Positions 1 to 17,149 of a DNA stretch of 18,178 nucleotides are shown one piece after another. The translations under genes were made by a program, and so were the position numbers. This DNA is from Octopus sinensis (lineage: Eukaryota). Below the pieces are notes generated by a model, which ran no database searches, had not been told where the DNA came from, and was given only the letters and a program-made list of their open reading frames with translations. The stretch lies in NCBI RefSeq assembly GCF_006345805.1, contig NW_021824396.1:1-18178 (forward strand), in the 5' to 3' direction. Each line of letters opens with the position of its first letter. The first letter of the stretch is position 1.

Positions 1-1060
1 CACCACCACCACCACCATCACCGCCACCACCACTACCATCACCACCACCATCACCACACCACCACTACCATCACCACCACCACCACCATCACCACCACCA
101 CCACCACCATCACCACCACCACACCACCACCATCACCACCACCACCACCATCACACCACCACCACCTCTCCATCACCACCACCATCCACCACACCACCCT
201 ACCATCACCACCACCACCACCATCACCACCACCACCACTACCATCACCACCACCACCACCACCATCACCACACCACCATCGCCATCACCATCACCCAACC
301 ACCACCACCACCACCATCACCACCACCAACCACCATCACCACCACCACCATACCATCACCACCCCACCACTCACCACCACACCTCTACCATCACCACCAC
401 CACTACCATCACCACCACCACCACCATCACCACCACCACCACTACCATCACCACCACCACCACCACCACTACCATCACCGCCACCACCACCACCACCACC
501 ATCACCACCACCACCACCACCATCCCGCACACCACCACCAACCACCACCATCACCACCACCACCACCACCATCACCACCACACCACCACCACCACCCCAC
601 CGCCACCACCACTCCCATCACCACCACCATCACCACCACCACCACTACCATCACCACCACCACCACCACCATCACCACCTCCACCACCACCATCACCACC
701 ACCACCACCACCATCACCACCACCACCACTACCATCACCACCACCATCACCACCACCACCACTACCATCACCACCACCATCAACATCACTATCACTACCA
801 ACAACAACAACGCTGCTATCACCATCACCACTACTAACACCACCACCACCACCACTACCATCACCGCCACCACCAGCGCCAGCACTACCATCACCACCAC
901 CACCACCACCACCATCACCACCGTCACCACTACCACCACCATACATCCACCATCGCCATCACCACCACCACCACCCTCCACACCATTGCCACCACCACTG
1001 CCATTATCACCACCACCCACCACCACCACCCACCACCACGCCTCCACCATTGACCACCAC
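1..1060. repeat. Degenerate (CAC)n/(CACCAT)n trinucleotide array, open at the window start
   Basis: About 1.05 kb of CAC with interspersed CAT/CAA/CAC variants; explains the Gly/Val-rich minus-strand ORFs. Confidence 0.97.
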
Positions 1061-1262: not shown

Positions 1263-1426
1263 GGCGTAGGAGTGGCTGTGTGGTAAGTAGCTTGCTAACC
1301 AACCACATAGTTCTGGGTTCAGTCCCACTGCGTGGCATCTTGGGCAGGTGTCTTCTGCTATAGCCCCGGGCCGACTAATGCCTTGTGAATGGATTTGGTA
1401 GACGGAAACTGAAAGAAGCCTGTCCG
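1263..1426 (+). mobile_element. tRNA-derived SINE, copy 1 (head and body only)
   Basis: A-box-like TGGCTGTGTGG, B-box-like GGTTCAGTCCC, body ending GAAAGAAGCCTGTCCGTATA; near-identical to the copy at 1451. Confidence 0.88.
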
Positions 1427-1450
1427 TATATATGTATATATATATATATA

Positions 1451-1785
1451 GGCGTAGGAGTGGCTGTGTGGTAAGTAGCTTGCTAACCACCACATAGTTC
1501 CGGGTTCAGTCCCACTGCGTGCATATCTTGGGCAGGTGTCTTCTGCTATAGCCCTGGGCCGACCAATGCCTTGTGAATGGATTTGGTAGACGGAAACTGA
1601 AAGAAGCCTGTCGTATATTATATATATATATATATATAATATATATGTGTGTGTATGTGTGTTGTGTGTCTGTGTTTGTCCCCCTAACATTGCTTGACAA
1701 CCGATGCTGGTGTGTTTACGTCCCTGTCACTTAGCGGTTCGGCAAAAGAGCCGATAGAATAAGTACTGGGCTTACAAAGAATAAG
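1451..1785 (+). mobile_element. tRNA-derived SINE, copy 2 (longer, with internal TA/TG microsatellite, 3'-truncated)
   Basis: Same head and body as 1263-1426 at offset 188, then (TA)n(TG)n and a further segment ending GGCTTACAAAGAATAAG. Confidence 0.88.
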
Positions 1786-1801
1786 CCTGTCGTATATATG
1801 C

Positions 1802-1866
1802 GACCCGTTGGACCTTGTTATGAACCCAGATTTGAAAGAAAAATTTAAATCCCTTTTCCCATCACT
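1802..1866 (+). pseudogene. Exon remnant encoding DPLDLVMNPDLKEKFKSLFPS (end of an ankyrin-repeat-like region); 5' part and acceptor not found
   Basis: PLDL resembles the ankyrin TPLxL motif and is followed by an amphipathic helix. Ends in a consensus donor CT|GTAAGT (1867-1872) in phase 2, matching the phase-2 acceptor of the RING exon (CT+A = Leu, giving ...LFPSL-CLFC...). An in-frame TAA lies upstream at 1760-1762 inside the SINE. Confidence 0.55.
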
Positions 1867-2393
1867 GTAAGTATTCCCTAGCAAAGCCAAAACAAATCGG
1901 TGAATTTTCTATTTTGTACATAATCATGTTTATATGCGTGTTTAGTTTTTATTCTACCAATACATTATACTTCACACTGGTGTCTTGAGTAAAGGCCACA
2001 CAACAATAGTAAGAAAACAAACTAAATAGAAAATGGAGTTGATAGGAGATGAAACAAAGAACATCTATTTGATTATATTCACATGACTGGTTCTGTTGAC
2101 AGATATACCTCACACACCACCACTCCGACCTTCGCCTACGTCTCTCATTGCCTGTCTTAAAGGAAACTGTGGTACTAAATAACGAAGGGAATGAACATGT
2201 TTTTGGCATTGTCGTTTCGAAGTCAGTGGAATTTGTCTGTCTGTGCCAATCAGTCACCACAAGTTACGAGAAAATGTTTGGAGATCAATGACTTCTTCAG
2301 ATATACCAAGAACAATTACATCATGTGTGGCAGACAGCATGGCTTACTCTATAAACCTGGATTCAGCTATAACTAGGGGCAGGTTTAAGAGCC

Positions 2394-3884
2394 GGGTGTG
2401 GAAGCAAGGGTTAGAATCAAAGAGCCTTAGAGTAAATGTAGCAAAGACCAAAGTTCTAGTAAGTAGGAAGGCGAACTCAGCACACACCCCCTCAGGCAGG
2501 TGGCCCTGCTCGATCTGTAGGAAAGGTGTAGGTAGAAACTCCATAAGATGCACCCAATGTAAGCTATGGACGCACAAGAGGTGCAGCAACATCAAAGGGA
2601 AATTAACAGATAAGATAGCCTTCATGTGCGGCAGATGCACAGGGACTATAGACACCACAGACACTCAGAAAACAGATTCCATCCACACTCCAGGAGAGAA
2701 ACTAGAAGTAGTTGATAGTTTCCGCACCTGGGTGACCAAGTTAGTAGTGGAGGTGGATGCACAGAGAGTATCACCACTAGAACACGAATAGCCTGGGCAA
2801 AGTTCAGAAAGCTCCTACCCCTACTGGCGACAAGGGTCTCTCCCTCAGAGCGAAAGTAGATTGTATGATGTATGTGTGCGAACTGCCATGCTTCACAGTA
2901 GTGAAACATGGGCTGTGACTGCAGAGGATATGCGTAGACTTGAAAGAAATGAAGCTAGCATGATCCGCTGGATGTGTAATGTCAGTGTGCACGCATGACA
3001 GATTGTAAGCACCCTGAGAGAAATGCTGGATATAAGAAGCATCAGATGTGGTGTGCAAGAGCGATGCTTGCAATGGTATGGTCATGTGCTGCGGATGGAT
3101 GAGGAGAGATGTGTGAAGAAGTGCCACTCCCGAACAGTTGAAGGTATCAGGGGGAGAGGTAGACCCAGGAAGACATGGGATGAGGTAGTCAAGCATGACC
3201 TCAGAGCGTTGGGCCTCACTGAGGCAATGGCGAAGGACCGAGATCTCTGGAGATATGCTGTGACTGCAAAGACCCGGGCTGCTTCCTGCATCAGTTCCAC
3301 ATAGCCCCTGCCCATTCAAAGTACCCCGGATCCCAGAATGTCCCGCTGTGCTTGAGGAGACCTGTTGAGTCAAGTACATGAATATGAACGTTGAAATAAA
3401 TATCAATGGAAATAGTAGTTGTGATGCCTGTGCCGGTGGCACATAAAAAGCATTATCCGAACGTGGCCGATGCCAGCGCCGCCCCGACTGGCTTCTGTGC
3501 CGGTGGCACATAAAAGGCACCATCCGAACGTGGCCAATGCCAGCGCTGCCCCGACTGGCTCCTGTGCTGGTGGCACATAAAAAGACCATCCGAACGTTGC
3601 CAGCGCCGCCTTGGCTGGCTTCCGTACCGCTGGCACGTTAAAAGCTCCAACCGATCGTGGCCGATGCCAGACTCCCCTGGCACCTGTGCAGGTGGCACGT
3701 AAAAAGCACCCACTACACTCGTGGAGTGGTTGGCGTTAGGAAGGGCATCCAGCCGTAGAAACTCTGCCAGATCAGACTAGAGCCTGGAGCAGCCTCCTGG
3801 CTTCCCAGACCCCGGTCGAACTGTCCAACCCGTGCTAGCGCGGAAAACGGACGTTAAACGATGATGATGATGATGATGATGATG
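2394..3884 (+). mobile_element. 5'-truncated, inactivated RTE-clade LINE (C-terminal RT region, 3' UTR tandem repeats, (GAT)n tail)
   Basis: Motifs WKQGLESKSLRVNVAKTKVL, LEVVDSFR(Y)LGD, LQWYGHVLRMDE and GRGRPRKTWDEVVKHDL are seen across three frames. Frameshifts near 2726 and 2856 and a premature TGA near 2996; tail (GAT)n at 3860-3884. Confidence 0.93.
3428..3706 (+). repeat. Tandem array of five 60-67 bp units in the RTE 3' UTR
   Basis: Units start at 3428, 3495, 3562, 3622 and 3684, each with a CTGTGCCGGTGGCACATAAAAAGCACC-like core. Confidence 0.9.
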
Positions 3885-4520
3885 TGCAATTCTGTAATCA
3901 TTTTTTGCTTTAATATCTGTTACACAAATATTCCAAAATTTTCCTGTGGAAGGGTTGTGTTTGTTTGACAACAATAGTTGGAAAGGACGCAGAGGTCAGG
4001 CACTGAAAGGACCAGTTTGTTAGTTGCACCATTTGCTATATTCCACACCATCATAAAACCATTGTCTACCTTTTATTGGACTGGGATCATCAGGATGTTA
4101 GTGGTCATTGAAGGCAGATAGAAGCATGACATTTACTGCAATCAACTCATCAATTTCCAGAAGAGTTCTCTGATTTTCTACATACATACGATTCTTAGGG
4201 CATTGTTCTGTTTTAGAATTGTGACCTGTTATGTTACATATTGTTCATCCATACAAGATGCCATGACAATTGTACCCTGTCTGTCCATCCATACAATTCA
4301 AAATCAAATGCCTAAATACTGATCACTTGTTAAACAGATCAAATTCAAAAAGTGTTTTTAATACACACAACACAAGTGTGTATATACAAATAGGCCTATA
4401 TTTGTTGAGAAGAATTGAGGTCTATGTTCGAAGTGAGATTTCTGGAATGTATGGAGTCATTGTTTCTGTGAACTGCATACTATAGACCAGTTTTTGTACG
4501 TATCAGAGTCAAGACATATT

Positions 4521-4524
<4 letters not shown>

Positions 4525-4583
<59 letters not shown>
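4525..4583. repeat. Perfect (TA)n microsatellite
   Basis: Uninterrupted TA run of about 59 bp. Confidence 0.98.
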
Positions 4584-4588
<5 letters not shown>

Positions 4589-4701
4589 ATTTAGGAATGG
4601 TCATTTTGCCAGTTTAGCCAATAAAAACACACGCACTATATATTTGGTGTTACTTTGCTTCAGTGATATTTTTTTTTACATTAATCGTAATCTTATTTCA
4701 G

Positions 4702-4741
4702 CCAGAGTTCTTTCGTCACACTCCTGTGACCGCATCAGTGG
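4702..4741 (-). ncRNA. Candidate minimal type I hammerhead-like ribozyme variant (better-preserved copy)
   Basis: Minus strand reads CCA CTGATGCG GTCAC-AGGAGT-GTGAC GAAAG-AA-CTC TGG: stem I CCA/TGG, stem II of 5 bp, GAAA, minimal stem III, CUC cleavage triplet. The core deviates from CUGANGA. Confidence 0.5.
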
Positions 4742-4811
4742 TCCTTTGTTTTCTTCTTACTTATTTGTGTCTCTCCTTACTAACCGTCAGACATTTTGTA
4801 TTTCTATTGTA

Positions 4812-5098
4812 TGCAGTAACAAGACAACGACATACGCAGGGGAAACGGCAAGAAGCATAGGAGAGCGGGTAAATGGGCATTGGAGACAACTCAAGGAAGG
4901 TAAAAGCTCATCGATTCTGTACCAACACGCCGAACAGGAACACGGGGGATCAATCAATAACATAGAAATTAAAATATTATCCACACATAGATCAGATGCA
5001 ACAATTAGACAAATACAGAAGCTACACACATAATAGAAAATAAACCTAGCCTGAATAGAAAACTAGAATGGAGCACTAACACACACCACAACATATGA
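4812..5098 (+). pseudogene. Penelope-type GIY-YIG endonuclease fragment with a 1-nt frameshift
   Basis: CSNKTTTYAGETARSIGERVNGH...SSILYQHAEQEHG...IKILSTHRSDATIRQI, then in the shifted frame from 5018 EATHIIENKPSLNRKLEWSTNTHHNI*. Matches the PLE pattern YxGETxR...RxxxH...RxIxEAxxI...LNxxxE. Confidence 0.88.
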
Positions 5099-5549
5099 CG
5101 ATAGAGGATCTGAAAACATAATAAATACACAGATAAATAAATAACTAATAGAAATAAATAACTATATATATATATATATATATATATGTAAATGTATTGT
5201 ATATGTATATATATTATATATATATATATATATTTTCGATTCAATTTATTATTATTATTACTAGTATTGTTGTTATACATACATACATCATACAAGAATG
5301 TAATGATAATAATGGGTGGATGTAACACATGAACAAAATAAGAATAAACAAAACAACAAAACCAAATACAAATCATGAACATATATAAACAGAAGATACA
5401 AATATTACAGGCATCCCCCCACTACACACACTAAATAAACATAACGCACATAGAGATATAAGCATGCGCAAATGAAGACATACAATAGAAATACAAATGA
5501 CTGACGGTTAGTAAGGAGAGACACAAATAAGAAAGAAGAAAACAAAGGA

Positions 5550-5588
5550 CCACTGATGCGGTCGCAGGAGTGTGCCAAAGAACTCTGG
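5550..5588 (+). ncRNA. Degenerate second copy of the hammerhead-like motif
   Basis: CCA CTGATGCG GTCGC-AGGAGT-GTGCC AAAG AA CTC TGG; stem II is mismatched and the G of GAAA is lost. Confidence 0.35.
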
Positions 5589-5685
5589 CGAATAAGATTA
5601 CGATTAATGTAAAAAATAAATATATGTATGTATATATATATGTGTATATATATATATTATATATTATGTATATATATATGTTGTA

Positions 5686-5718
<33 letters not shown>

Positions 5719-6027
5719 TTTTATTGAAATGGATAAATGAATTATCTTGTAAGGATTATTCAAATTTACCGATACCTGGGTAGCAAAATCACAACAGAAA
5801 AACACAGTTGAAGTTACGACCTTGGGGTGTCACAACCGTGCTTAGCGCGGATAATAGCGCTGCGCATTTGTTTTTGGATTTTTAAATCCTGGATTTTCCT
5901 GAAGGAATGCTGCAAATGGTCTTATTCAATCCGAATTTGGAAATTTGCGGCCTTTGAAACATGTTGTAAAAATAATAAAAGGAATTCTGTAGAATCATCG
6001 TTCAGCTCCATTTCTTCCTCTTCACTA

Positions 6028-6043
6028 ATATATATATATGTAT

Positions 6044-6089
<46 letters not shown>

Positions 6090-6192
6090 TACACATATAT
6101 ATATACATATATATATATATAATTATATATATATATTATATATATATATATACATACATATATATACAATATATATATATACATATATATAC

Positions 6193-6224
<32 letters not shown>

Positions 6225-6236
6225 ATGTGTGTGTGT
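6028..6236. repeat. Compound (TA)n/(TG)n microsatellite
   Basis: Imperfect TA tract followed by a TG tract; similar TA tracts at 5164-5232 and 5623-5720. Confidence 0.95.
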
Positions 6237-6536
6237 GGAGGTGCAATGGCCCAGTGGTTAGGGCAGCGGACTCGCGGTCGTTGGATCGCGATTCCCGACC
6301 GGGCGTTGTGAGTGTTTATTGAGCGAAAACACTTAAAGGTCCACGAGGCTCCGACAGGGGGTGGTGATCCCTGCTGTACTCTTTTGCAACAACTTTCTCT
6401 CCCTCTTTCTTCTGTTGGCTTGCTCGCTCAGCCAGCGGGGTGGCGTCATTTGAAGGCTAAAACAATGCGAAGCGCATTGTGACCAGCGATGTGTAGCAAC
6501 ATCTGATAGCCTGGTCGGTCACGTGATCATGTGATA
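6237..6536 (+). mobile_element. tRNA-derived SINE, second family
   Basis: A-box TGGCCCAGTGGTTAG, partly deleted B-box region (GGATCGCGATTCCC), 3' end CACGTGATCATGTGATA before a TA tract. Confidence 0.8.
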
Positions 6537-6560
6537 TATATATATATGTGTGTGTGTGTG

Positions 6561-6895
6561 TATAGTGGTTGGAGCATTGGGCTCCCAATCAGAAGGTAGT
6601 GAGTTCGATTCCTGGACCGGGCTGTGTGTTGTGTTCTTGGGCAAGACACTTTATTTCATGTTGCTCCAGTTCACTCAGCTCCGGAAATGAGTTGCATTGT
6701 CACTGGTGCCGAGCTGTGTCAGCCCCTTTTGCCATTTTCCCTGGATGACATCAGTGGAGAGGGGGAGGCTGGTATGCATGGGCGACTACTGGTCTTTCAT
6801 AAACAACCATGCGTGGACTTTCTAGGTTCAGGGAACTTTCTAGGTTCAGCTCCATGGTCATTGATGACTAAGGGGCCGTGTCTTTACCCTTTACC
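6561..6895 (+). mobile_element. tRNA-derived SINE, third family
   Basis: B-box GAGTTCGATTCC; body GGGCAAGACACTTTATTTCA...GCTCCAGTTCACTCAG; homologous over its length to 15989-16313; internal 15-bp duplication at 6817-6831/6835-6849. Confidence 0.85.
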
Positions 6896-7044
6896 CCTTC
6901 CCTCCCTATGTTCTCTGTGGCACTTATACATACATACATATATATATACATATATTTTTTTTTCTTCTGATTAAATATGGTTCAAATATTTTATTTGAAG
7001 AATTAAAAATTGTCAGTTTTGTAGAGAAAGCTTTAGAAAAACCT

Positions 7045-7135
7045 TGCAGCCTTCCAGTGTGCCAGCCCAGTCAAACCGTCCAACCCATACCAGCATAGAT
7101 AACGGATGTTAAGGGATGAGATAATGATTATGAAT
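7045..7135 (+). mobile_element. Solo 3' tail fragment of the same RTE family
   Basis: GTCAAACCGTCCAACCCATACCAGCATAGATAACGGATGTTAA followed by decayed GAT repeats aligns with 3815-3884 and 15635-15697. Confidence 0.75.
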
Positions 7136-7169
7136 GTTATTGACGAGATGTTTGTATCTTGTTCCACAG

Positions 7170-7310
7170 ATGTCTGTTTTGTGAAGAGAAAGTGTCCACA
7201 CTGAAATGCCAATCTTGTGGACAGATGGTGATCTGTGAGGAATGTGGTACCGAACCTAACTCTACATGTCTTGAATGTCAGCAACCCACAACTAGAAAGT
7301 GGTGTGGTTG
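7170..7310 (+). CDS. Internal exon encoding a RING-like zinc finger (mind bomb-type spacing, 8 Cys)
   Basis: Acceptor TTGTTCCACAG|A and donor TG|GTAAGA; 141 bp open in phase 2/2: CLFCEEKVSTLKCQSCGQMVICEECGTEPNSTCLECQQPTTRKWCG. Confidence 0.85.
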
Positions 7311-8771
7311 GTAAGACTATATTTCATCCTGTTTGTCTCATTGGCCCAGGTCTGTCGTAATCTGGCAGATTTATGAATAAAAACTGTTCCATTTGTCTTT
7401 GTGATGGTGTATCTATCACAACATCCACTAAACATTGTCTTCATCCAGTTACAAGACTCGTCACACTTTAAGAGGGTATTGTCTGCAAAATATGACTAAT
7501 GAATGATACTGAAAGATAAATGGTGACTAACTGAAATATCAATAAATCTCTCTGGTTCTGTTTGTGGTCAATTATGAGTGACTAATGATTTATTAGTATT
7601 TTGTGAATCTGGTCATTAGAGACAATGGTACTTATAAGAATGTCAGTCATCTTTGGAGATTCAATGACAAAATCTCAACTGATTTTTATGGAACGACATT
7701 GCAGAGTTTCACCGTTGAATTATTTGTTCTAGTTGTTATTTGGTGAAAGGTGGTTTAGTAGAAAGTGTTTTAGCAAAGTATTATTGAATGAAAATAAACT
7801 AGTGTTAAGTTCTTTTGGCAGAAATTTGCGAGTAAAGCAAACTTAATTTGAAAGGAATCATTTCATTGGTTGAAAAGTATATAGCTGAAGCCATCTTGGT
7901 TTTTGACTGAAAATTATTCCAAAAGTTTGTTTCTGGACACTTCTAGAAATCTTCAATGAAAGTTATAAAAACCACAATTTTTCTCTGTTTTTTAGTGACA
8001 TTTACGCTGTCCTCACAAAGCAATCTCACTCACAACCTTGCATGTCTCGGAGTGTTGAAATGTCTCTCACACTAACGTAATAGACATGGCATATTTCTCT
8101 TTTATGACTTGAAGTCATTTATCTTAACTTTTTCTTTAGAATACCTTGATGAATTAGGGATTCTAATTCTTGTCCTCTCTTCACGATAAATTATCTGTAG
8201 CGAAAAAAGACAACTTGAAAATGTTTTTCATTACATTGCTTTGGTTTAATCTCCAAGAGAACAGTTTGAGATTACTCCTGGTATTATATTTTGCAATTGT
8301 AATTATTTGTCTCTATAAAATTATTAATCAAAATAATGCAGCTTTGATCTTTTTCCTTTGATAATGGCCGTTCTATTAACTCCTTCCAGTTGCAAGAGAA
8401 AGCCACGGAAGAAAAATATTTATACGTCACATACAACATATCTATTCAACATATTCAGTTTGTTTTCAATTAAAACCTTGCCGAGATGTTGCACCAAGAC
8501 CCATTATTAACTGATCTTGATAGTTGAACTGTTGACCCCCTTAGAAACCATTTATCTAGTTCAGTTAAAGTGGCATCAATAGTTCCAGTATGTTTTTGCA
8601 AAGTTGTCCTCCAGAAATTCTCCATAATTTGTCATCTTATGAAGAACTCCAATAATTACAATACTCTGATGTTTGATATGTGATGTTGTCCCTTATTAAG
8701 GTGTGAACCCAGAATGTCTTGGGTTAGACTACGTTTTGTGGTAGTAGAGAAAATAATTTCTCTAACAATAC

Positions 8772-8952
8772 TGTAGCAACATCTGATAGCCTGGTCGGTC
8801 ATGTGATCACGTGATATATATATATGTGTGTGTGTGTGTATAGTGGTTGGAGCATTGGGCTCACAATCAGGAGGTAGTGAGTTCGATTCCTGGACCGGGC
8901 TGTGTGTTGTGTTCTTGGGCAAGACACTTTATTTCACGCTCCAGTTCACTCA
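8772..8952 (+). mobile_element. Duplicated composite: tail of SINE family 2, microsatellite, head of SINE family 3
   Basis: Near-identical to 6492-6677 (offset about 2280), including the junction microsatellite. Confidence 0.9.
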
Positions 8953-10744
8953 TATGTTTACATTGAAACCAATTATTAAGGTTAACATTTAAAAAAATAC
9001 ACAGACTGGAATAACATATGCGTACCAGGCGTGACTTGAACTCCCAATTCCTTGTTGGTGACTCTAATGTTTGAGTAACATTTACCAGATCCCTACAGAC
9101 ATTCTTAGACTCCCACTTGTTGCCTTCTTGATGATATTAATGCTAATAGAGGTAAGGTCTTCAGAGTGTTTCACCTTTTGGTTTTACTTCTGACTTGATT
9201 ATCCTGTTCAAAGCAGATTATGAAACTTGGTCGTTGTTATTTGACCAAGTAAAGACATTTTTATTAGTATTTGGCACTGAACTTGGTAACAATTTTGTTT
9301 GGTTGCTCATGGGACTACCATATTATTATTTATGCTGAGACACAATCATATTCATTTTAATGAGGGTCACATGTTCTTCACTTGGATTATGATATAATCC
9401 ATATAGATTATCTAGTATTGCACCACCAAGCACAGTGGTAGTGTATCACATATACACCCCATTAACATGATAATTAATCAGCTCTCATTCATTAACTTTC
9501 TTACACATGTCTGAAAAGTAACCTCATTTTGTCATGGCATCATCTTGCACCTAACATTTTACAACTTGTTACCCTCCGTGTAAATATATTGTTTTACTTG
9601 GGTAAAGGGCCACATCCTTACAAACTGGGATTATTGACCCTTATAATCCAGTAAGGTTCAGATGTTAATCTCACTTGGCTTCATTTCATTTATGTGACAC
9701 TCTAATACTTTATAAAATATATCTTAATTAGTGACACTTTTCAATTAGTTGATTTTAATTAGCTTTATTGACAAATGTGGTGGTGGTGGTGGAGTGGGGT
9801 GTGAGTTGGGTCACACATTCCTTGTAATGTTATTCTTGTATTAACAATGATATCAGAAGAACAGTTTCTGTCAGTGAAATCCTCCTGCACAGGTGTAACC
9901 CTTGTGTTTTCAAGTTTGTTGGAAACTGGGTTTTCATCCAATTGAGCTTCACCACATTGATATAGGGGACATCAAAAGGGTATGATTAATGCATAGATGA
10001 GGTTTGATAGAGATGTCCTTTATTCTTGAGAACCAGTTCTTTTCTACCATTTCAGATATTTTTCTTTTGCAATAACGTGTGGATGAACAGTTATATGTAG
10101 TGAATGAGGTTTTGTGCAGTGTTTTAGGACACCTGTTATTATTTTCTGTTCCACCTGTGTAGAACTAATCATCGCTCACCTGAAAAATAGCTGATTTATT
10201 ATGGAAAGGGAATGAAATTCAAATATTTCCTGAATCAGCTGACATTCTGATGAACCGTGATGTGGGGCAGTTAGAATTAAAGATTTCCAGCAGCTCCCTT
10301 CAACAAAGGGATCAGGTGTATGTTTATCCTAGTTGGTGTGTCATGATATTGTGCTCTAGGTCTTTGGAGGACTGACTTGGTTGACATAGGAATTAAGCAG
10401 AAAATGAGAAGAATGTTGGAAGTGAGAGGACAATGCCATGCCATTGACTTGGCAGAGATATAAGAAAGGAAAGACAAAACTAGAAAAGCATTTTCATTAA
10501 GTGATGATAATTAAGAGATAATTGTTACGTTGATTGTGTAGAATGTCTTACTAAAGAGAAGAGGCTGAGGAAGTTTAGTCTGGTGTGGTACCACTGTAGA
10601 AAGTATAAAAATGTTGATCCAAGCCATGGTGGTCACCAATTGACCATTGATAATAGGAATACCGCATGATAATAAAATGTAGATTATTAACAGAGATAAA
10701 GAAATTTTACTACAAATTGCAAAATTTCAACATATTTATTTCAG

Positions 10745-10816
10745 AGAGTCGAAAGCTGAAGGAGAAGGATCTTCTGAAAGTGGCCAAGAAGTTAGGGAAT
10801 AATTGGTGGCAAGTGG
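10745..10816 (+). CDS. Exon encoding the N-terminal part of a death domain
   Basis: Acceptor TTTATTTCAG| and donor G|GTGAGT; 72 bp, phase 1/1: (E)SRKLKEKDLLKVAKKLGNNWWQV(G). Matches the death-domain pattern LxxVAxxLGxxWxxLG. Confidence 0.9.
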
Positions 10817-12899
10817 GTGAGTATGAAATAACCGAATTGCTTTCTGTAAAGTTTACTTCCACCGGAGCTATTTTGTTTATCAAAATGTCTGAGAACCGGT
10901 TCCATTCCTAATTTCCAATTGAAAGGTTAACTCTAAAGATATTAAAGAGATTGATATTACTGGAATTTCATAAAATATCCACCACGGTTAGCACTGTGGT
11001 TGGTAATAATGGCTAAATTAGAAGACGCAATAGAGTTAATATTGTCTTATGGAGCTGGAAAGTAAAATTCATTGTTGTTTAAGAGTAAACAGGTGAGTTA
11101 ATGGACAATGTCTTTGTTTTACATTTTAAGTCTGTTGCTAAATTATTGTAATGAAGGAAATATTTGCTGAGTTAACAACCAGAATAAGTTTTCCTTATTC
11201 CAGCTGAAGACTTAAAGTTTGGTTTTTTTTGAAATGATTGAAAACATTAATTGTATAAGAAGCCGATGAATAATCCTATTTATATCAACCTACTGGAAGA
11301 TGTCCTGCCACAGATCTGGAGATGCCTCAATAAAAAGAGGCTTAATAGAGGTCGCTCTGCTCAATCTATTCTCCCCAGGCAAAAAGAGAGGATTCCCCTG
11401 AGGGAATTTACCGGAAAATGAATATTCACAAGTGAGGCCAAACTGGCAGAGGCTTCTCTCTCTGTGATTGATATAATAATAAATGAATAAGCTCCGGAGA
11501 TGTGATTGAATCCGGAGTTCATTGGAGATTGGTCAAAAGAAATATCACTGATCATTCGATTGTCAGAGTCCTGTTGGGAAGTTTGTAACGTGATAGATTG
11601 CACAGAGAGACACTAATTTCATGACCTGGGTATACTGAGAGAGGGGGTTGATTCAATTAATTCAACCTCATCCACTAAAGGGTCATATTTGGACTCAAAA
11701 TAACAGACCCCGGTTTAGTCAACCAAGTTATGATTGATGTCCCATTTAGAAATTGTCTGGAAAGATTACAAATTTATTCATAGGGAATTACATTACTGTC
11801 CAAAACAGAGAATGGATTGTGTGAAAACAACCTCCTAAAATTTCCGGGTTTTCTAGTGTGGCAGGCAAGTTCTATAGCTTTCAAAGAATACCATTGTATT
11901 GTTCACATTGTCCATTTTTTTCTTGTGTGATGCCGCTGTCTTTTACTTGGGATCACAGGACTACATCATTGACTGTGTCCATTTTAACAGGACAGAGTGT
12001 ATTTTGAGTGACGTGTTGTAGCTTCTCCACTGTCAAGTGTCCATCTAGTTGACGATCACACTTCACTCGCATGCAGTCGTCAGTTGAATGTGGTGCAGCA
12101 TTTTTGCCTCTCCACTGTCCAGTGTTTGTCTAAGTTGAAGAACACACTTTACTCAGATAAAGTGTTTAATTGTATGTAGGTGTATGGCAGAGATGCTGGT
12201 CACTCCTGTCTTCTTTCCTGCTAGCTGAAACTCTAAAACCTCTCCGTTATCAACTTCTCTCTAAATTGTGGCATTCAGCCAGTGAAAGAGGTCCTTATTA
12301 CGAGTCATGAACCCAAAATGGTTAAGCTGGTGTCTTCTAAAATATGTGGTGTGTACCTAACAGTATTATATTTTGTACTTTGTGTAATTAAGACCATTCT
12401 GGTGTCATGCTTATTTGTATTTTAATTGGTCCAGGTGTCCGTAGTATGACTGGTATTGCTTGATGGTTCAGTCTCCACTTTTTCTAAATGCTGAGACGTT
12501 TTTAGTGAAGAAGCCGGCATGTAGGGTTTCTCTTCGCTGTGTTCTGTGGTGCTCGTGTCATGCATAACAAGTAATGAAGTAAAGACAGGTTTTCAGAATG
12601 TATATTACATTGATATTGATAATTTGGAATCTCTTGTTATTGGTATGAGGTGAATGCATGAAACGACAGAATGAATATATATATATATACATACATATAT
12701 ATATATATATATAAACGTGGTGGTTTTGTCTGGTGGTGGCCACTATAAAGAGAGCGACGTTAGTCTAGCTGTGTCTGACCACACGAGTTGAGTAACCAGT
12801 GGATAGGCGAAAAGTTAAGCCTAAAAGAGAAAGTGCCAGAGAGAGCCAGGCAAAAAGAGAGAATTGTGTGGTAGATCACTTTTTATAGTCGAGTGGTGG

Positions 12900-13122
12900 T
12901 AATTGCAAGACGGATATTCTTTAAGCTGAGCCACTTGACCGGAGACCAAGGAATAGACCAAGAATGAGATTGTTGGATAATATCTAAAGTCTTAATTGGT
13001 GAAGCTTGAGAATCCAACTGGACAGTAAGATGAAAGTAACTTTGAAGGGGGTTCCCTGGCGACTCTACCCCCCACAACCCTTTTATGAACAGAGGGTAGA
13101 GAAAATGGATAGATGGATGAGA
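12900..13122 (+). mobile_element. Old RTE-clade 3' remnant resembling Rex3/Expander
   Basis: AEPLDRRPRNRPRMRLLDNI*SLNW*SLRI...LYPPQP resembles the RTE C-terminus GRRPRGRPRxRWxDxVxxLxWxxLxI...LLPPRP. Followed by a hairpin CTCTACCC (13063-13070)/GGGTAGAG (13094-13101) and an ATGG-like tail. Confidence 0.55.
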
Positions 13123-13467
13123 TAATGTGACTCTTTGGGTGATATTAATTGATTCTTTAGGGTCTCATATGCTATTACCCACACAACCATTTTCCCTGCC
13201 ATCTCTTTACCAGAAATTCTCTCAAATGTAATTTTCAATACTTTTAAAACACAATTTTCTCCGTTTTAATCTTCTTTTCCAACAACTTTGTTACTTTTTA
13301 ATCAGAATTCATACAAACAGAGAACAATGTCCTACATTTTCCATATTTCTTGACTATTTTCAAAATTTCTCTCTTGAAGTTTCTTTGTTAGAACAACCTA
13401 CAGGAGACATCTTTTATATTATTGTTGATGTTGTTATAATTATTTCTTCTTTTTGTATCTTTTGCAG

Positions 13468-13667
13468 GGATTTTCTTAGGAGTTGAAACTTCTGAACTGG
13501 AAATTCACGACGATTCTAAAGACACTGTGAAACAGGGCTACATGGTGTTGCACAAATGGTTTAAAAGTTGTGATCCAGAGAAACAAACACTCAAAACACT
13601 TGGAGATGCCCTCGAGGAAGCTGAGTGCCTTGATGCACTCAAATGTCTGTCATCAGATGTAAAGTGA
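13468..13667 (+). CDS. Terminal coding exon completing the death domain
   Basis: Strong acceptor TTCTTTTTGTATCTTTTGCAG|; joins 10816 in frame (G+GG = Gly): IFLGVETSELEIHDDSKDTVKQGYMVLHKWFKSCDPEKQTLKTLGDALEEAECLDALKCLSSDVK*, with TGA at 13665-13667. Confidence 0.92.
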
Positions 13668-13916
13668 AGCTCTGTGTAAATGTTGTTGTTTAGTTTGAGG
13701 TCAATCTCGACCAAATACAGACCTTTGGTTAAATGCATTCCAGTCATGACCATCCTGTCTTTATCCTTACGGTAGAGGAGCTACACAAACATTGTCCAGC
13801 GTATTCTTCTTTAGGGGGATAAGGTATGAATTGTGGTCGATTTGGCTACTACTTCTAGCAGATCTATCACAAAGAAATCCCTTTGCTGGTTCGTCTCCCC
13901 TGTTGTTAACTTTTGA

Positions 13917-13922
13917 AATAAA
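13917..13922 (+). promoter_or_regulatory. Candidate polyadenylation signal of the death-domain gene
   Basis: AATAAA 250 nt after the stop codon, with a downstream GU-rich (GTT)n tract at about 13944-13968. Confidence 0.6.
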
Positions 13923-14077
13923 GATAAACTTTGAACTGTTCATTTGTTGTTGTTGTTGCTATTGTTGTATGCCTCAGCACCTCCCTAAACACTTCTATTG
14001 TTCTAAAACAGTTTTAATATCCTCGCGTATATTCATAGTTATCTCCCTTTATTTCTAGCTAGCGTATATATATATAT

Positions 14078-14196
14078 ATAGAATGGTTGTATACTGTCAA
14101 TCTAACACGAACGTGACAGTACACCACCGTTGTATAGCCCTAGGAAGCATCGACGTTAGATTGACGTGTTAGATTGACAGTATACAACCATTCTAT
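14078..14196. repeat. Perfect 32-bp inverted repeat (fold-back or MITE-like)
   Basis: ATAGAATGGTTGTATACTGTCAATCTAACACG (14078-14109) is the exact reverse complement of 14165-14196; 55-bp spacer. Confidence 0.92.
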
Positions 14197-14250
14197 CGCC
14201 CCACCACCGTACATGTCTCTACGAGAGATTTAGAAATTTAGTATTTCTTA

Positions 14251-14407
14251 TATCCCATTATCTTTCATACCTCATTCGTTACTATTGTTAAACGTCTGTA
14301 CTCATACAATAACTGCTTCGTTTTTCCTATCTTTTCTCTACGAAATTTAACCCTTTAACCCTTCAATCCTTCAATCCTTAATTTCCATCTTTTCCGCCAT
14401 TCTTCTT

Positions 14408-14438
<31 letters not shown>

Positions 14439-14688
14439 GTCGCCATTACGATTTACGGTTCCCAATTTTTAGACTTCCTTTCTTCTCCAACAGCGGCTTC
14501 CGGCCTTCATATTCGCAGCAAGTTGCAAAAACATTTTATCCCTTTATCTTTCGTACCTCATTCGTTACTATTGTTAAACGTCTGTACTCATACAATAACT
14601 GCTTCGTTTTTCCTATCTTTTCTCTACGAAATTTAACCCTTTAACCCTTCAATCCTTCAATCCTTAATTTCCATCTTTTCCGCCATTC
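14251..14688 (+). repeat. 152-bp direct repeat pair separated by (TTC)n and about 100 bp of unique sequence
   Basis: 14251-14402 versus 14537-14688, two mismatches by manual comparison; (TTC)n at about 14400-14437. Confidence 0.93.
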
Positions 14689-14700
14689 GGCGGTGCCCCC

Positions 14701-15697
14701 GAAAGAAGCCAGTATGATCCGATAGATGTGTAATATCAGTGTGCATACTCGACAGAGTGTAAGTACCTTGAGAGAAAAGTTGGACCTAAGAAGCATCAGA
14801 TGTGGTGTGCGCTGGTATGGTCATGTAGTGAGAATGGATGAGGATAGTTGTGTGAAAAAGTGCCACACACTAGCGGTTGAGGGAACCTGTGGAAGAGGTA
14901 GATACAGGAAGACCTGGGATGAAGTGGTGAAGCATGACCTTCGAACTTTGGGTCTCATCAAGGAAATGACTAGTGACCGAGACTTTTGGAAATATGCCGT
15001 GCGTGAGAAGACCCAGCAAGCCAAATGAGACCATAATCTCGTGGCCTATGCCAGGGGCGTTATCAGCCCACATATGTATACCTTTTCCTTCTTTGGACAC
15101 TAAAACTCTGCTTGCGAAGACCTGTTGAGGCAAGTGGAATCAAAATCAAAATCAAATTCGATGACTGGCATCCGTGCTAGCGGGTTGCAAAGAGCACCAT
15201 ACGAGTGTGATCATTGATAGAGCGGCTAACCGGCTTCCGTACCAGTGGCACTTAAAAGGCACCATTCGAGCGTGATCGTTACCAGTGTCGCCTTACTGGC
15301 ACTCGAGCCCCGTGCTTGTAGGGTATTAAGAGCACCATCCGAGCGTGATCATTGCCAGAGCGGCTATCTGGCCTCCGTGCCGGTGGCATGTGAAAGACAC
15401 TATTCGAGTGTGATCGTTACCAGCATCGCCTTACTGGCACCTGTGCCAGTGGAATGTATAAAAGATTCAAGCGAAGTCGTTGCCAGTACCGCCTGACTGG
15501 CCCCTGTGCCAGTGACATGTAAAAGCACCCACTACACTCTTGGAGTGGTTGGTGTTAGGAAAGGCATCCAGCTGTAGAAACTCTGCCAGATCAAGATTGA
15601 AGCCTGGTGCAGCCATCTGGTTTGCCAGTCCTCAGTCATTTGTCCAACCCATGCTAGCATGGAAAGCGGACGTTAAATGATGATGATGATGATGATG
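14701..15697 (+). mobile_element. Second 5'-truncated RTE-clade LINE copy
   Basis: LREKLDLRSIRCGV..RWYGHVVRMDED..GRGRYRKTWDEVVKHDL, homologous to 2941-3300; 3' UTR repeats, shared terminal module, and (GAT)n at 15678-15697. Confidence 0.92.
15166..15530 (+). repeat. Tandem array in the RTE 3' UTR with A-B-A-B-C organisation
   Basis: Units of about 63-72 bp. Units 1 and 3 share GTGATCATTG..AGAGCGGCTA; units 2 and 4 share GTGATCGTTACCAG..TCGCCTTACTGGCAC. Confidence 0.8.
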
Positions 15698-15988
15698 TAT
15701 CTAGGGACATTTCACTTTGTCCTGTTGTGTTTCAGGCTTGGCCATTCCAAAGTGGGGGTCGTGGCACACAAATTCAGGGCGTTTTGAATGCAATTAAGAA
15801 TTATTTTCATTTTTTATTCTAGCTTTAGGATTAATATTTACTGATTTCTGCAGTTTTTCCTGAAAAAAACTTTGTGATTCTACACTTAAAAATAAATCCA
15901 AAACTTTAAAATCCAATAATAAAACTGTGCTGAAAACTCCTTTCATATTAAAATAATGACACAACATTTGTTTATTTTAATTCCATAT

Positions 15989-16313
15989 GAGGCACATGGT
16001 TCAATGGTTAGAGTACCAGGCTTCAAACCATGAGGTAGTAAGTTCGATTCTCAGGCCAGGTTGCGTGTTGTGTTCTCGACACATTATTTCACTTTGCTCC
16101 AGTTCACTCAGATGTAGAAATGAGTTGCAATACCTTTGGTGCCAAGCTGTATTGGCCCCTTTGCCTTTCCCTTGGGTAACATTGATGGCACAAAGAGGGG
16201 CAAGCTAGTATGCTGGCCTTCTATAAACAACCCTGCTCGGACTTGTGCCTAGGAGGGTAACTTTCTAGGTGCAATCTCACGGTCATTCACGACAGAAGGG
16301 AGTCTTTAACGTT
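15989..16313 (+). mobile_element. tRNA-derived SINE, third family, diverged copy
   Basis: A-box TGGTTCAATGG, B-box AAGTTCGATTC; colinear with 6561-6895. Confidence 0.85.
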
Positions 16314-17149
16314 TGTGGAAAATCCTCTTTCCAAAAAATCTTCAGATGATGGAAATGAACCCTTTCCCTCTACAATACTTCAAACTGCTCAACTTTTATT
16401 GCATTTTAATTTGCAATTAAATTCCAAGATTTTTGCATCATATACTCAGATGAAATTGTACGTAAAACCTATGAAACCTCTTAGGACTTCCTTTGGCAAT
16501 AAAATTATGTGACAGGAATCTCACTTCTGCAAAATCAAGTGAAACAAGATGGGAAGATTTGTTATTGTAGTTTTTTTTGTGATAGGAGTGAACAAATCGG
16601 TTTCGAGATTAAATCAAAATTATTTAAATTAGACCAAAAATCTTTATCCAAAAATTGATAGGGAATTACTTTTAAGAATGTTTAGTATTAAACAAATAAT
16701 TTTGTATCAAACATTATATAGAATTATTCTAATATCTCAGTGATTTTTAGCTACAATAACTGGAACTGAAATTATGTTTACACATATATGATGTAAATAC
16801 AAGATCATTTGATGTCAGTTTTCTATGTCATGTTTGGACTAAAAACACAACAAAATAATAATAAATTTGATTTGTCTTCCTGAAAGTTGAATGAAACCAT
16901 AAGTTACTGTTGATACGAATTTATTGGAATATTTTTTGTTTTGAATTTAATATGTAATAATAAAATGTTGCCCATAGATAAGTGGTTGAATTTATCAAAG
17001 CATGAAACCACAGAAAATATTGATGATAAGGCTGAAGAGAGTCACAAACGTCAAGGAGTGTCAGGAACTCACAGGTAAGCAATTCTCTGAGTACAACACA
17101 GTTTTACATCAAAAGCAGGAAGCTATTGTGGATTTACTTTTACTTTGAA

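What the first reader, a model, noticed from the sequence alone, without database searches (positions are those of the whole stretch)
1802..13922. Hidden spliced gene with (ankyrin)-RING-death domain architecture
Four short exons missed by the ORF track join into a protein tail: ankyrin-like end, RING-like finger, C-terminal death domain. Two of the three junctions are phase-compatible with consensus splice sites (seen). True Mind bomb (MIB1/MIB2) ligases have ankyrin and RING domains but no death domain (established). An E3-like protein with a death-fold recruitment module suggests a lineage-specific ubiquitin adaptor in immune or cell-death signalling (inference). I recall similar expanded 'MIB2-like' predictions in octopus, but their function is uncharacterised as far as I know.
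Basis: partly seen in the sequence, partly recalled or inferred. Interest (0 to 1): 0.72.

Follow-up and report, generated by a model that had tools for sequence, protein, structure and literature searches.

The report
Broken octopus ankyrin-RING-death-domain gene
The four exons are real and come from an octopus-only family of ubiquitin ligases that carry a death domain, but this Octopus sinensis copy has lost its ankyrin part, a zinc-binding histidine and its reading frame, so only the death-domain end is still intact.

Summary
The window is a whole 18-kb contig of Octopus sinensis (VCDQ01012590.1). They are homologous to the last four coding exons of O. bimaculoides XP_014782788.1, a 390-aa protein with ankyrin repeats, an IAP-type RING and a C-terminal death domain (DD). 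At least about 30 clusters of octopus proteins share this architecture. RefSeq calls them 'MIB2-like', but those scanned lack the Mind-bomb domains. The architecture call and the recollection of octopus 'MIB2-like' genes are therefore right.

This copy is not an intact hidden gene:
- The ankyrin exons are gone, and the break lies inside the last ankyrin exon, next to a SINE-like repeat.
- The RING histidine, invariant in 12 of 12 relatives, is glutamine.
- A net +1 nt change before the conserved GTAAGA donor makes the RING-to-DD junction read TGA.

The sister species O. vulgaris shares the first two lesions. It keeps the frame but has a nonsense codon in DD exon 1. The DD reading frame here is intact, folds as a death domain, and is already annotated as the DD-only gene LOC115226982.

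Most likely this is a recently disabled relic. A DD-only decoy function is the main rival. Interest is modest for this locus and moderate for the uncharacterised family.

The parts
1263..1799 (.). SINE-like repeat block: a 188-nt unit in two tandem copies, a TA microsatellite and a further SINE-like tail. It abuts the 5' break of the ankyrin-tail exon.
   Evidence: Tandem repeat at 1263-1638. Copies elsewhere in the window and in L003/L004. The alignment with O. bimaculoides loses homology upstream of about 1800.
1802..1866 (+). Relic of the last ankyrin exon (DPLDLVMNPDLKEKFKSLFPSL). It has donor ACT|GTAAGT, no acceptor, and an in-frame stop at 1760-1762 upstream.
   Evidence: Homologous to the 3' 62 nt of L004 exon 5 (12925-13101). 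The 5' 110 nt of that exon are missing in both O. sinensis and O. vulgaris.
7170..7310 (+). RING exon, IAP/MIB-type C3HC4 finger, degenerate.
   Evidence: Pfam zf-C3HC4_3 23 bits, below the cut-off of 27. tblastn to the P0004 RING gives E 2e-12. Acceptor and GTAAGA donor are conserved in O. vulgaris, O. bimaculoides and the paralog L002.
7222..7224 (+). CAG (Gln) in place of the RING zinc-ligand His (CAC in O. bimaculoides).
   Evidence: His is invariant in 12 of 12 family members. The window is the only Gln in A7. The change is shared with O. vulgaris.
7294..7310 (+). Net +1 nt rearranged segment (AGAAAGTGGTGTGGTTG) that shifts the exon's exit phase from 1 to 2.
   Evidence: O. bimaculoides has AGAAAAAGTAGAATCG and O. 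vulgaris AGAGAAAGTGGAATTG, both 16 nt and phase 1. The 7310|10745 junction reads TGA.
9847..9913 (+). First coding exon of the RefSeq model LOC115226982 (MISEEQFLSVKSSCTGVTLVFS + K split). Its donor CAA|GTTTGT is weak.
   Evidence: 100% identical in O. vulgaris. The homologous stretch in paralog L002 has no ATG and no GT donor.
10745..10816 (+). Death-domain exon 1 ((E/K)SRKLKEKDLLKVAKKLGNNWWQVG), phase 1 to phase 1.
   Evidence: O. vulgaris has TGG to TGA in this exon.
13468..13667 (+). Death-domain exon 2 with the TGA stop at 13665-13667.
   Evidence: Pfam Death is above the cut-off. AF2 model pLDDT 85 with death-domain matches.
13917..13922 (+). AATAAA, a candidate poly(A) signal 250 nt after the stop.
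   Evidence: This rests on the sequence only.

Best explanation
The window holds the 3' remnant of the O. sinensis ortholog of O. bimaculoides XP_014782788.1. That gene belongs to an Octopus-restricted family with this layout: N-terminal ankyrin repeats, an IAP-type RING, a variable linker, and a C-terminal death domain.

Inferred function of intact members: the ankyrin repeats bind a partner. The RING recruits a ubiquitin-loaded E2. The PIDD/RIPK1-like DD docks the ligase onto, or oligomerises it within, homotypic death-domain assemblies.

Order of events in the O. sinensis / O. vulgaris lineage (shown by comparison):
1. The ankyrin exons were lost by a break inside the last ankyrin exon, next to a SINE-like repeat.
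2. The invariant RING histidine became glutamine.
3. After the two species split, each gained its own disabling change: a +1 frameshift at the RING exon's 3' end in O. sinensis, and a nonsense codon in DD exon 1 in O. vulgaris.

The fused E3-DD protein can no longer be made here. The still-open DD reading frame is most likely a young, not yet decayed leftover, which RefSeq models as a DD-only protein. This is an unprocessed, unitary pseudogene in the making. The claim that it has no function is an inference.
For: Identity and orthology:
- The contig is identified and carries a single annotated gene.
- Exon-by-exon homology to P0004, in order.
- Identity to the L004 locus is about 88% in DD exons and flanks and 77% around the RING exon. 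It is about 75-80% to the paralog L002.
- No other O. sinensis protein is more than 49% identical to the P0004 RING-DD segment.

Family architecture.

Lesions:
- No match to P0004 residues 1-234 in the window or in 10 kb upstream in O. vulgaris.
- Collinear homology starts in the middle of exon 5.
- His to Gln at an invariant ligand.
- A +1 nt change giving TGA at the junction.
- An independent TGA in O. vulgaris DD1.

Weak first exon of the RefSeq model: the donor GTTTGT is weak, and the matching stretch in a paralog has neither ATG nor GT.
Against: - The 89-codon DD reading frame is intact in O. sinensis.
- dN/dS for the DD against O. bimaculoides is 0.24, with dS 0.28.
- Replacements polarised with 20 paralogs split 6 to 5 between the two lineages, so the window's lineage shows no acceleration.
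- RefSeq predicts a complete DD-only CDS, and other octopus DD-only models exist.
- No RNA-seq could be examined, so transcription and splicing are unknown.
- The frameshift rests on one unplaced 18-kb contig.
Confidence: 0.55

Rival explanations
1. Neo-functionalised DD-only gene. After losing its ligase half, the locus gained a new first exon (9847-9913). It now makes the 112-aa protein that RefSeq predicts. That protein would act as a death-domain-only decoy or adaptor that caps or seeds DD assemblies, in the way CARD-only and PYD-only proteins do in vertebrates.
For: - Intact DD reading frame, Pfam Death above the cut-off, confident death-fold model.
- dN/dS 0.24 and no excess of derived replacements.
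- RefSeq model P0001.
- Several other short DD-only octopus models: P0010, P0017, P0022.
Against: - O. vulgaris has an identical first exon but a TGA inside DD exon 1, so the product is not conserved even in the sister species.
- The donor CAA|GTTTGT is weak.
- The matching stretch in paralog L002 has neither ATG nor GT.
- An 89-codon frame staying open is expected by chance over the 2-3% divergence between O. sinensis and O. vulgaris.
- Some DD-only models are plainly 5'-truncated predictions. For example, P0002 has in-phase ANK-tail and RING exons upstream.
Confidence: 0.28
2. One reading: an intact but unannotated RING-DD or (ANK)-RING-DD protein is made. This would need either the alternative donor at 7306|7307 (GTG|GTTGGT), which restores phase 1 and gives ...TTRKWC-ESRKLKEK..., or the +1 nt being an error of this contig.
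For: - Donor 7306 restores the frame and gives a 157-aa peptide with both Pfam hits.
- The O. vulgaris annotation CAI9744465.1 does join E1, the RING exon and DD exon 2.
- The ancestral gene had exactly this splice.
Against: - GTTGGT is a poor donor lying 4 nt upstream of the strong, conserved GTAAGA.
- The change is a complex multi-base difference, not a homopolymer slip.
- Even in frame, the product would lack the ankyrin repeats and the invariant His.
- E1 has no acceptor and has a stop 40 nt upstream.
- The O. vulgaris model is chimeric. It skips the stop-containing DD exon 1, spans 78 kb and runs into LRR exons and a second DD.
Confidence: 0.08
3. Assembly artefact or haplotig. The 18-kb unplaced contig is an error-rich or alternative-haplotype copy of an intact chromosomal gene in O. 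sinensis.
For: The contig is short and unplaced. One lesion, the frameshift, is private to it.
Against: - The independent chromosome-level O. vulgaris assembly is collinear at about 97% and shares the ankyrin deletion, the breakpoint and the His to Gln change.
- No second O. sinensis protein close to P0004 exists in the protein collection.
Confidence: 0.07

Closest known systems
Octopus bimaculoides XP_014782788.1 (P0004; RefSeq name '26S proteasome non-ATPase regulatory subunit 10', UniProt A0A0L8GA88), the intact ortholog
   Same: Same exon order, splice sites and phases for the ankyrin-tail, RING, DD1 and DD2 exons. DD protein identity is about 85%. Flanking introns are about 88% identical.
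   Different: The ortholog has four more ankyrin exons and a complete exon 5. Its RING has CGH. The RING exon leaves in phase 1 (…TRKSRI|ESPKLKEK…). The RING-to-DD1 intron is about 360 nt, against 3.4 kb here.
Octopus 'E3 ubiquitin-protein ligase MIB2-like / MIB1-like / ankyrin-3-like' RefSeq proteins (e.g. XP_014776763.1, XP_029656683.1, XP_029652081.1)
   Same: Same family: ankyrin repeats, IAP-type RING, linker and C-terminal DD. The conserved junction motif is TPLDLIKN..LKEKLKTFLPP-C..C.
   Different: Paralogs have DDs 44-67% identical to the window's. Many carry 1-6 copies of a linker unit of about 17 aa (CPKSEEKAVQTVxES). The window has none.
True Mind bomb ligases MIB1/MIB2
   Same: Ankyrin repeats followed by a zf-C3HC4_3-type RING, which is why the name was transferred automatically.
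   Different: No MIB/HERC2, ZZ or MIB-repeat domains in any of 10 family members at E<=0.01. There is a single RING that is not C-terminal. A DD is present. From my own knowledge, MIB1/2 have no DD.
cIAP1/cIAP2/XIAP, and the oyster IAPs with DD plus RING (PMC8917759)
   Same: The family RING profile is closest to the cIAP1/2 and XIAP RINGs (E 4e-10 to 2e-8). A death-fold module and a RING sit in one chain: CARD in cIAP1/2, and 'death domain architecture' in oyster IAPs.
   Different: No BIR domain. The order is RING then DD, with the DD at the C-terminus, so the RING lacks the free C-terminal tail of IAP RINGs.
PIDD1, RIPK1, TRADD and ankyrin-G death domains
   Same: These are the best sequence and fold matches to the window's DD. 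PIDD scores E 1.7e-8 and RIPK1 4e-6. By fold, RIPK1 6ac5 gives TM 0.85, TRADD 0.83 and PIDD 2of5_H 0.78.
   Different: Only 22-26% identity. The host proteins have unrelated architectures: LRR-ZU5-UPA, kinase, or ZU5-UPA.
ANKDD1A/B (vertebrate ankyrin-repeat and death-domain proteins) and CARD-only / PYD-only decoys (own knowledge, not tested here)
   Same: ANKDD1 combines ankyrin repeats with a C-terminal DD. The decoys are single death-fold proteins derived from larger genes, which is the model for the DD-only reading.
   Different: ANKDD1 has no RING. No homology to either group was tested here.

Membership tests
Octopus ANK-RING-DD family (RefSeq 'MIB2-like') | C-terminal death domain of the family subtype | tested here: met
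   Pfam Death 25.7 bits, above 22.6. A profile search places octopus ANK-RING-DD proteins as nearest relatives. The AF2 model and Foldseek confirm the fold.
Octopus ANK-RING-DD family (RefSeq 'MIB2-like') | IAP-type RING with all eight zinc ligands (C-x2-C…C-x-H-x3-C-x2-C…C-x2-C) | tested here: not met
   His is replaced by Gln (codon 7222-7224). His is invariant in 12 of 12 relatives. Pfam scores 23 bits, below the cut-off of 27.
Octopus ANK-RING-DD family (RefSeq 'MIB2-like') | N-terminal ankyrin repeats | tested here: not met
   Only 21 codons of the last ankyrin exon remain. There is no tblastn match to P0004 residues 1-234 in the window or in 10 kb upstream in O. vulgaris.
Octopus ANK-RING-DD family (RefSeq 'MIB2-like') | Open reading frame continuous from the RING exon (exit phase 1) into the DD exon | tested here: not met
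   Exit phase is 2. The 7310|10745 junction gives TGA.
Octopus ANK-RING-DD family (RefSeq 'MIB2-like') | Descent from a family gene (orthology of exons, splice sites and introns) | tested here: met
Mind bomb (MIB1/MIB2) | MIB/HERC2 domain, ZZ finger and MIB repeats N-terminal to the ankyrin repeats | tested here: not met
   Absent from all 10 full-length relatives at E<=0.01. The window itself has no N-terminal part to test.
Death-domain superfamily, DD subfamily | Six-helix death fold that matches DDs better than CARD, PYD or DED | tested here: met
   pLDDT 85.2. The top 25 PDB matches are all DDs with TM up to 0.85. PYD and DED matches appear only at E>1. The DSSP string resolves five helices of at least 4 residues; helix 3 shows as a short turn.
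IAP family | At least one BIR domain | tested here: not met
   No BIR hit in 10 relatives. Only the RING resembles IAP RINGs.
Unprocessed (unitary) pseudogene | Introns retained, disabling lesions present, no intact copy elsewhere in the genome, no functional product | tested here: inconclusive
   Introns and lesions are shown. No closer O. sinensis protein exists in the collection. The whole assembly could not be searched, expression is unknown, and the DD reading frame is still open.

The most novel reading that the evidence does not exclude
The octopus ANK-RING-DD proteins would be a genus- or family-restricted, tandemly expanding class of death-domain-tethered E3 ligases used in innate immune or cell-death signalling. 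This locus would then show how such a gene is converted into a stand-alone DD-only regulator: loss of the ligase half plus capture of a new first exon. That would be an invertebrate counterpart of the CARD-only and PYD-only decoys.
Probability: 0.2. Interest if true: 0.55.

Novelty: new member of a known kind. Interest (0 to 1): 0.33.

Why it matters
For this locus, the result corrects three annotations:
- The O. sinensis DD-only gene LOC115226982 is the tail of a broken ligase gene.
- The O. vulgaris model CAI9744465.1 is a 78-kb chimera.
- The family name 'MIB2-like' is misleading.

For biology, the interesting object is the family rather than this copy. Octopuses carry dozens of genes that fuse ankyrin repeats and an IAP-like RING to a PIDD/RIPK1-like death domain. 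I found this combination in no other taxon and in no paper of the library searched. The family offers a direct, testable link between ubiquitination and death-domain signalling in a lophotrochozoan whose immune signalling is poorly known. Its turnover is visible: a truncated relic here, duplicated linker exons in a paralog, and tandem arrays. That pattern is typical of fast-evolving defence genes.

Tried and rejected
1. I first treated L002 (O. bimaculoides LGKD02103728.1, protein P0002) as the ortholog. Its 54-57% DD identity and 75-80% DNA identity show it is a paralog. L004 at about 88% is the ortholog. L002 still helped: it shows in-phase ANK-tail, intact RING and linker exons upstream of a RefSeq 'DD-only' model.

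2. A protein search with the L002 ANK-tail plus RING peptide found no candidate at all. Those exons are therefore unannotated there. This search was wasted.

3. BLAST hits at subject positions 13675-16006 and 2867-3699 looked like a second copy inside O. vulgaris. They belong to L004, because L003.fa holds two records. I dropped the idea of a conserved minus-strand DD neighbour in O. vulgaris.

4. RING exon as a terminal exon. The in-frame TAA at 7312-7314 and the AATAAA at 7376 suggested this. I rejected it as the ancestral state, because the GTAAGA donor and the direct splice to DD1 are conserved in the ortholog. It remains possible as an intron-retention product.

5. An extra small exon between 7310 and 10745 to fix the phase is not needed. 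The ortholog has none, and the phase problem traces to a +1 nt change.

6. Exon-versus-intron identity with L002 suggested no constraint. dN/dS against the true ortholog shows constraint on the DD.

7. Pfam scans of other window ORFs gave only a PHD-like hit in a retroelement-like ORF.

8. Five literature searches found no description of the family.
Full report
**Source and annotation.** The window is the complete contig VCDQ01012590.1 of the Octopus sinensis assembly GCA_006345805.1. It is AT-rich, repeat-laden eukaryotic DNA. RefSeq calls one gene on it, LOC115226982. The product is 112 aa (P0001) from three coding exons: 9847-9913, 10745-10816 and 13468-13667. This is a death-domain-only model.

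**Checking the observation.**
- E1 1802-1866: donor ACT|GTAAGT.
- E2 7170-7310: acceptor ccacag|, donor TTG|GTAAGA.
- E3 10745-10816: acceptor tttcag|, donor TGG|GTGAGT.
- E4 13468-13667: acceptor ttgcag|, stop at 13665-13667, AATAAA at 13917.

Junctions E1/E2 and E3/E4 are in phase. E2 leaves two bases and E3 needs one, so the E2/E3 junction reads TG+A = TGA.

Pfam gives Death at 25.7 bits, above the cut-off of 22.6. It gives zf-C3HC4_3 at 23 bits, E 7e-5, below the cut-off of 27. E1 has no acceptor. The frame is closed by a stop at 1760-1762, and the sequence immediately upstream is a SINE-like repeat.

**Relatives.** I searched a profile of the window's DD plus the one close hit (P0002) against 1.84 billion representative proteins. 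It found 409 proteins at E<=1e-3 and 65 at E<=1e-10.

The ten best hits that are full-length with a C-terminal DD all contain ankyrin repeats, a zf-C3HC4_3 RING and the DD. None contains MIB/HERC2, ZZ or BIR domains. A local HMM of the family RING finds it directly upstream of the DD in about 30 of the 150 best representatives.

Every one of these that I looked up is from O. bimaculoides, O. sinensis or O. vulgaris. RefSeq names them 'E3 ubiquitin-protein ligase MIB2(-like)', 'MIB1-like', 'ankyrin-3-like' or '26S proteasome non-ATPase regulatory subunit 10(-like)'. A word-indexed search with a 12-sequence RING-DD profile returned 27 proteins at E<=1e-5, all Octopus.

More distant DD relatives without a RING include:
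- multi-DD proteins of starfish, amphioxus, a gadid fish and a tubeworm;
- an octopus adhesion GPCR with a C-terminal DD;
- an Argonauta fragment.

So is the point that these are not true Mind bomb proteins.

**Ortholog comparison.** P0004 (O. bimaculoides XP_014782788.1, 390 aa) is the closest full-length relative. Its gene (L004 10001-15698) has eight coding exons:
- four ankyrin exons;
- exon 5, ending …NPLDLVENPDLKEKLKSNFPSL;
- the RING exon;
- DD exon 1;
- DD exon 2.

In P0004 the RING exon splices directly to DD exon 1 (…ITRKSRI|ESPKLKEKDLL…).

The window aligns to L004 at about 88% across DD exons and flanks, and about 77% around the RING exon. It aligns to the paralog L002 at about 75-80%. 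The O. vulgaris chromosome (L003) is collinear with the whole window at about 97%.

**Three lesions separate the window from the intact ortholog.**

1. *Ankyrin loss.* Nothing matches P0004 residues 1-234, either in the window or in the 10 kb upstream in O. vulgaris. Collinear homology begins in the middle of exon 5 (L004 13031 = L003 9978 = window about 1800), directly after a SINE-like repeat. The breakpoint is shared by O. sinensis and O. vulgaris.

2. *RING histidine.* The RING reads CGQ (CAG, 7222-7224) where O. bimaculoides has CGH (CAC). That His is invariant in 12 of 12 family members, together with the seven Cys. O. vulgaris shares the Gln. By established RING chemistry this removes one of eight zinc ligands.

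3. *Frameshift.* The last 16 nt of the RING exon are AGAAAAAGTAGAATCG in O. bimaculoides and AGAGAAAGTGGAATTG in O. vulgaris, both leaving phase 1. They are AGAAAGTGGTGTGGTTG (17 nt) in the window, upstream of the same conserved GTAAGA donor. Hence the TGA at the junction.

O. vulgaris keeps the frame but has TGG to TGA in DD exon 1, at the first W of NNWWQVG. This explains the O. vulgaris model CAI9744465.1 (P0003). That model starts at the Met inside E1, includes the RING exon, skips DD exon 1 and joins DD exon 2. It then runs on for 78 kb into LRR exons and a second DD. It is a chimeric prediction.

Two shared lesions followed by two independent, different disabling changes in sister species is the pattern expected of a gene released from selection.

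**What is still intact.**
- The 89-codon DD frame is open in O. sinensis.
- An AlphaFold2 model built with nine octopus DDs has pLDDT 85.2 and pTM 0.75.
- Its 25 best PDB matches are all death domains: RIPK1 TM 0.85, TRADD 0.83, PIDD 0.78, ankyrin-G 0.76.
- By sequence profile the closest solved DDs are PIDD (1.7e-8) and RIPK1 (4e-6).
- dN/dS against O. bimaculoides is 0.24 for the DD (dS 0.28), 0.45 for the RING and 0.62 for E1.
- Polarising the 13 DD replacements with 20 paralogs gives 6 on one lineage, 5 on the other and 2 ambiguous. The window's lineage shows no acceleration.

The DD was therefore constrained for most of the time since the split from O. bimaculoides. Either the loss is recent or the DD still has a use.

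The RefSeq first exon (9847-9913) has a weak donor (CAA|GTTTGT). It is identical in O. vulgaris, where the product would be truncated. In paralog L002 the homologous stretch has neither an ATG nor a GT. The frame-restoring donor at 7306 (GTG|GTTGGT) is equally weak and sits 4 nt from the strong conserved donor.

**Mechanism.**

*Intact family (inference from domains).* The ankyrin repeats give partner recognition. The RING, closest to cIAP1/2 and XIAP (E 4e-10 to 2e-8), recruits an E2 carrying ubiquitin. The DD gives homotypic assembly. An E3 would thus be tethered directly to death-domain signalling platforms, or activated by DD-driven clustering. Between RING and DD, paralogs carry 0-6 copies of a unit of about 17 aa. 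In L002 these linker exons are phase 1-1 and arose by duplication of the DD-exon acceptor region. This explains the many RefSeq isoforms.

*This locus.* The ligase cannot be made. My estimates are:
- about 55% that the whole locus is a young relic;
- about 28% that the DD-only product is used, for example as a decoy;
- about 8% that a RING-DD protein is still made through the weak donor or because the +1 nt is an error;
- about 7% that the contig misrepresents an intact gene.

**Comparison with known systems and novelty.**
- It is not a Mind bomb: no MIB/HERC2 or ZZ domains, a single internal RING, and a DD.
- It is not an IAP: no BIR domain.
- The nearest analogues are cIAP1/2 (CARD plus RING) and the oyster IAPs with DD and RING (PMC8917759).
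- Five full-text searches found no description of the octopus ANK-RING-DD family. [quoted passage not shown]
- The family is annotated but misnamed and uncharacterised. The window adds a degenerate member.

**Verdict.** This is a new, broken member of a known kind, of modest interest as a locus. The family itself deserves attention.

Noticed in passing
window 1-1039: About 1 kb (CAC)n trinucleotide microsatellite, 348 copies at 77% match. It fills the contig's 5' end and aligns to O. vulgaris L003 8369-9827 at 88%.
   Followed up: partly
window 1263-1638; 6492-6677 and 8772-8952; 16005-16314: SINE-like element. One site has a 188-nt unit in tandem duplicate (94% match). There is a 94.6% identical pair in the RING-DD intron region, and many copies in L002, L003 and L004. 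One copy marks the break in the ankyrin exon.
   Followed up: partly
window 2243-3304 (+) and 14702-15028 (+); 3428-3710 and 15190-15440: Two diverged copies (76%) of a retroelement-like fragment. Its ORFs include a PHD-like Cys-rich stretch (Pfam PHD 25.4 bits). Each copy is followed by 67- to 138-nt tandem repeats.
   Followed up: partly
L003 10001-88092 (O. vulgaris OX597843.1; model CAI9744465.1 = P0003): A 78-kb, 278-aa gene model that is chimeric. It joins the relic's E1, RING and DD2 exons to a window 16941-17078 ORF, LRR exons and the DD of another family member about 70 kb away. Several DD-exon-1-like copies lie in tandem at L003 72-88 kb.
   Followed up: partly
L002 1700-1829, 4387-4517, 5858-5905, 8378-8612 (O. 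bimaculoides LGKD02103728.1): The RefSeq 'death domain-containing' protein P0002 (LOC106878668) looks 5'-truncated. An ankyrin-tail exon and an intact CGH RING exon lie upstream, and they are in phase with the annotated first coding exon, whose frame is open from its acceptor. The acceptor region of the DD exon is triplicated (about 5790, 8310 and 9810), which creates linker exons.
   Followed up: partly
L004 3196-6013 (-), O. bimaculoides CM046630.1: A separate 117-aa death-domain-only gene lies head-to-head about 4 kb upstream of the intact ANK-RING-DD ortholog. No counterpart was seen in the 10 kb upstream of the O. vulgaris locus.
   Followed up: partly
P0023 / XP_014788728.1, XP_052821851.1 (O. 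bimaculoides): An adhesion-type GPCR ('GPR126-like', 1283-1535 aa) carries a C-terminal DD of the same subtype (E 2.4e-20). One paper mentions a DD in one octopus aGPCR (PMC6408891).
   Followed up: partly
P0008, P0014, P0016, P0028, P0030: The nearest non-octopus relatives of this DD are proteins with 2-8 tandem DDs. They come from Acanthaster, Patiria, Gadus, Branchiostoma and Ridgeia, and all are uncharacterised.
   Followed up: no
window 4666-4813 vs 5623-5479; 14248-14402 vs 14534-14688: A 149-nt inverted repeat (93%) brackets an AT-microsatellite-rich stretch inside intron 1. A 155-nt direct repeat (98%) lies downstream of the gene.
   Followed up: no
window 7312-7314 and 7376-7381: If the RING exon's donor is not used, the frame ends at TAA straddling the donor. 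An AATAAA follows 62 nt later, so an intron-retaining transcript would encode a 68-aa RING-only peptide.
   Followed up: no
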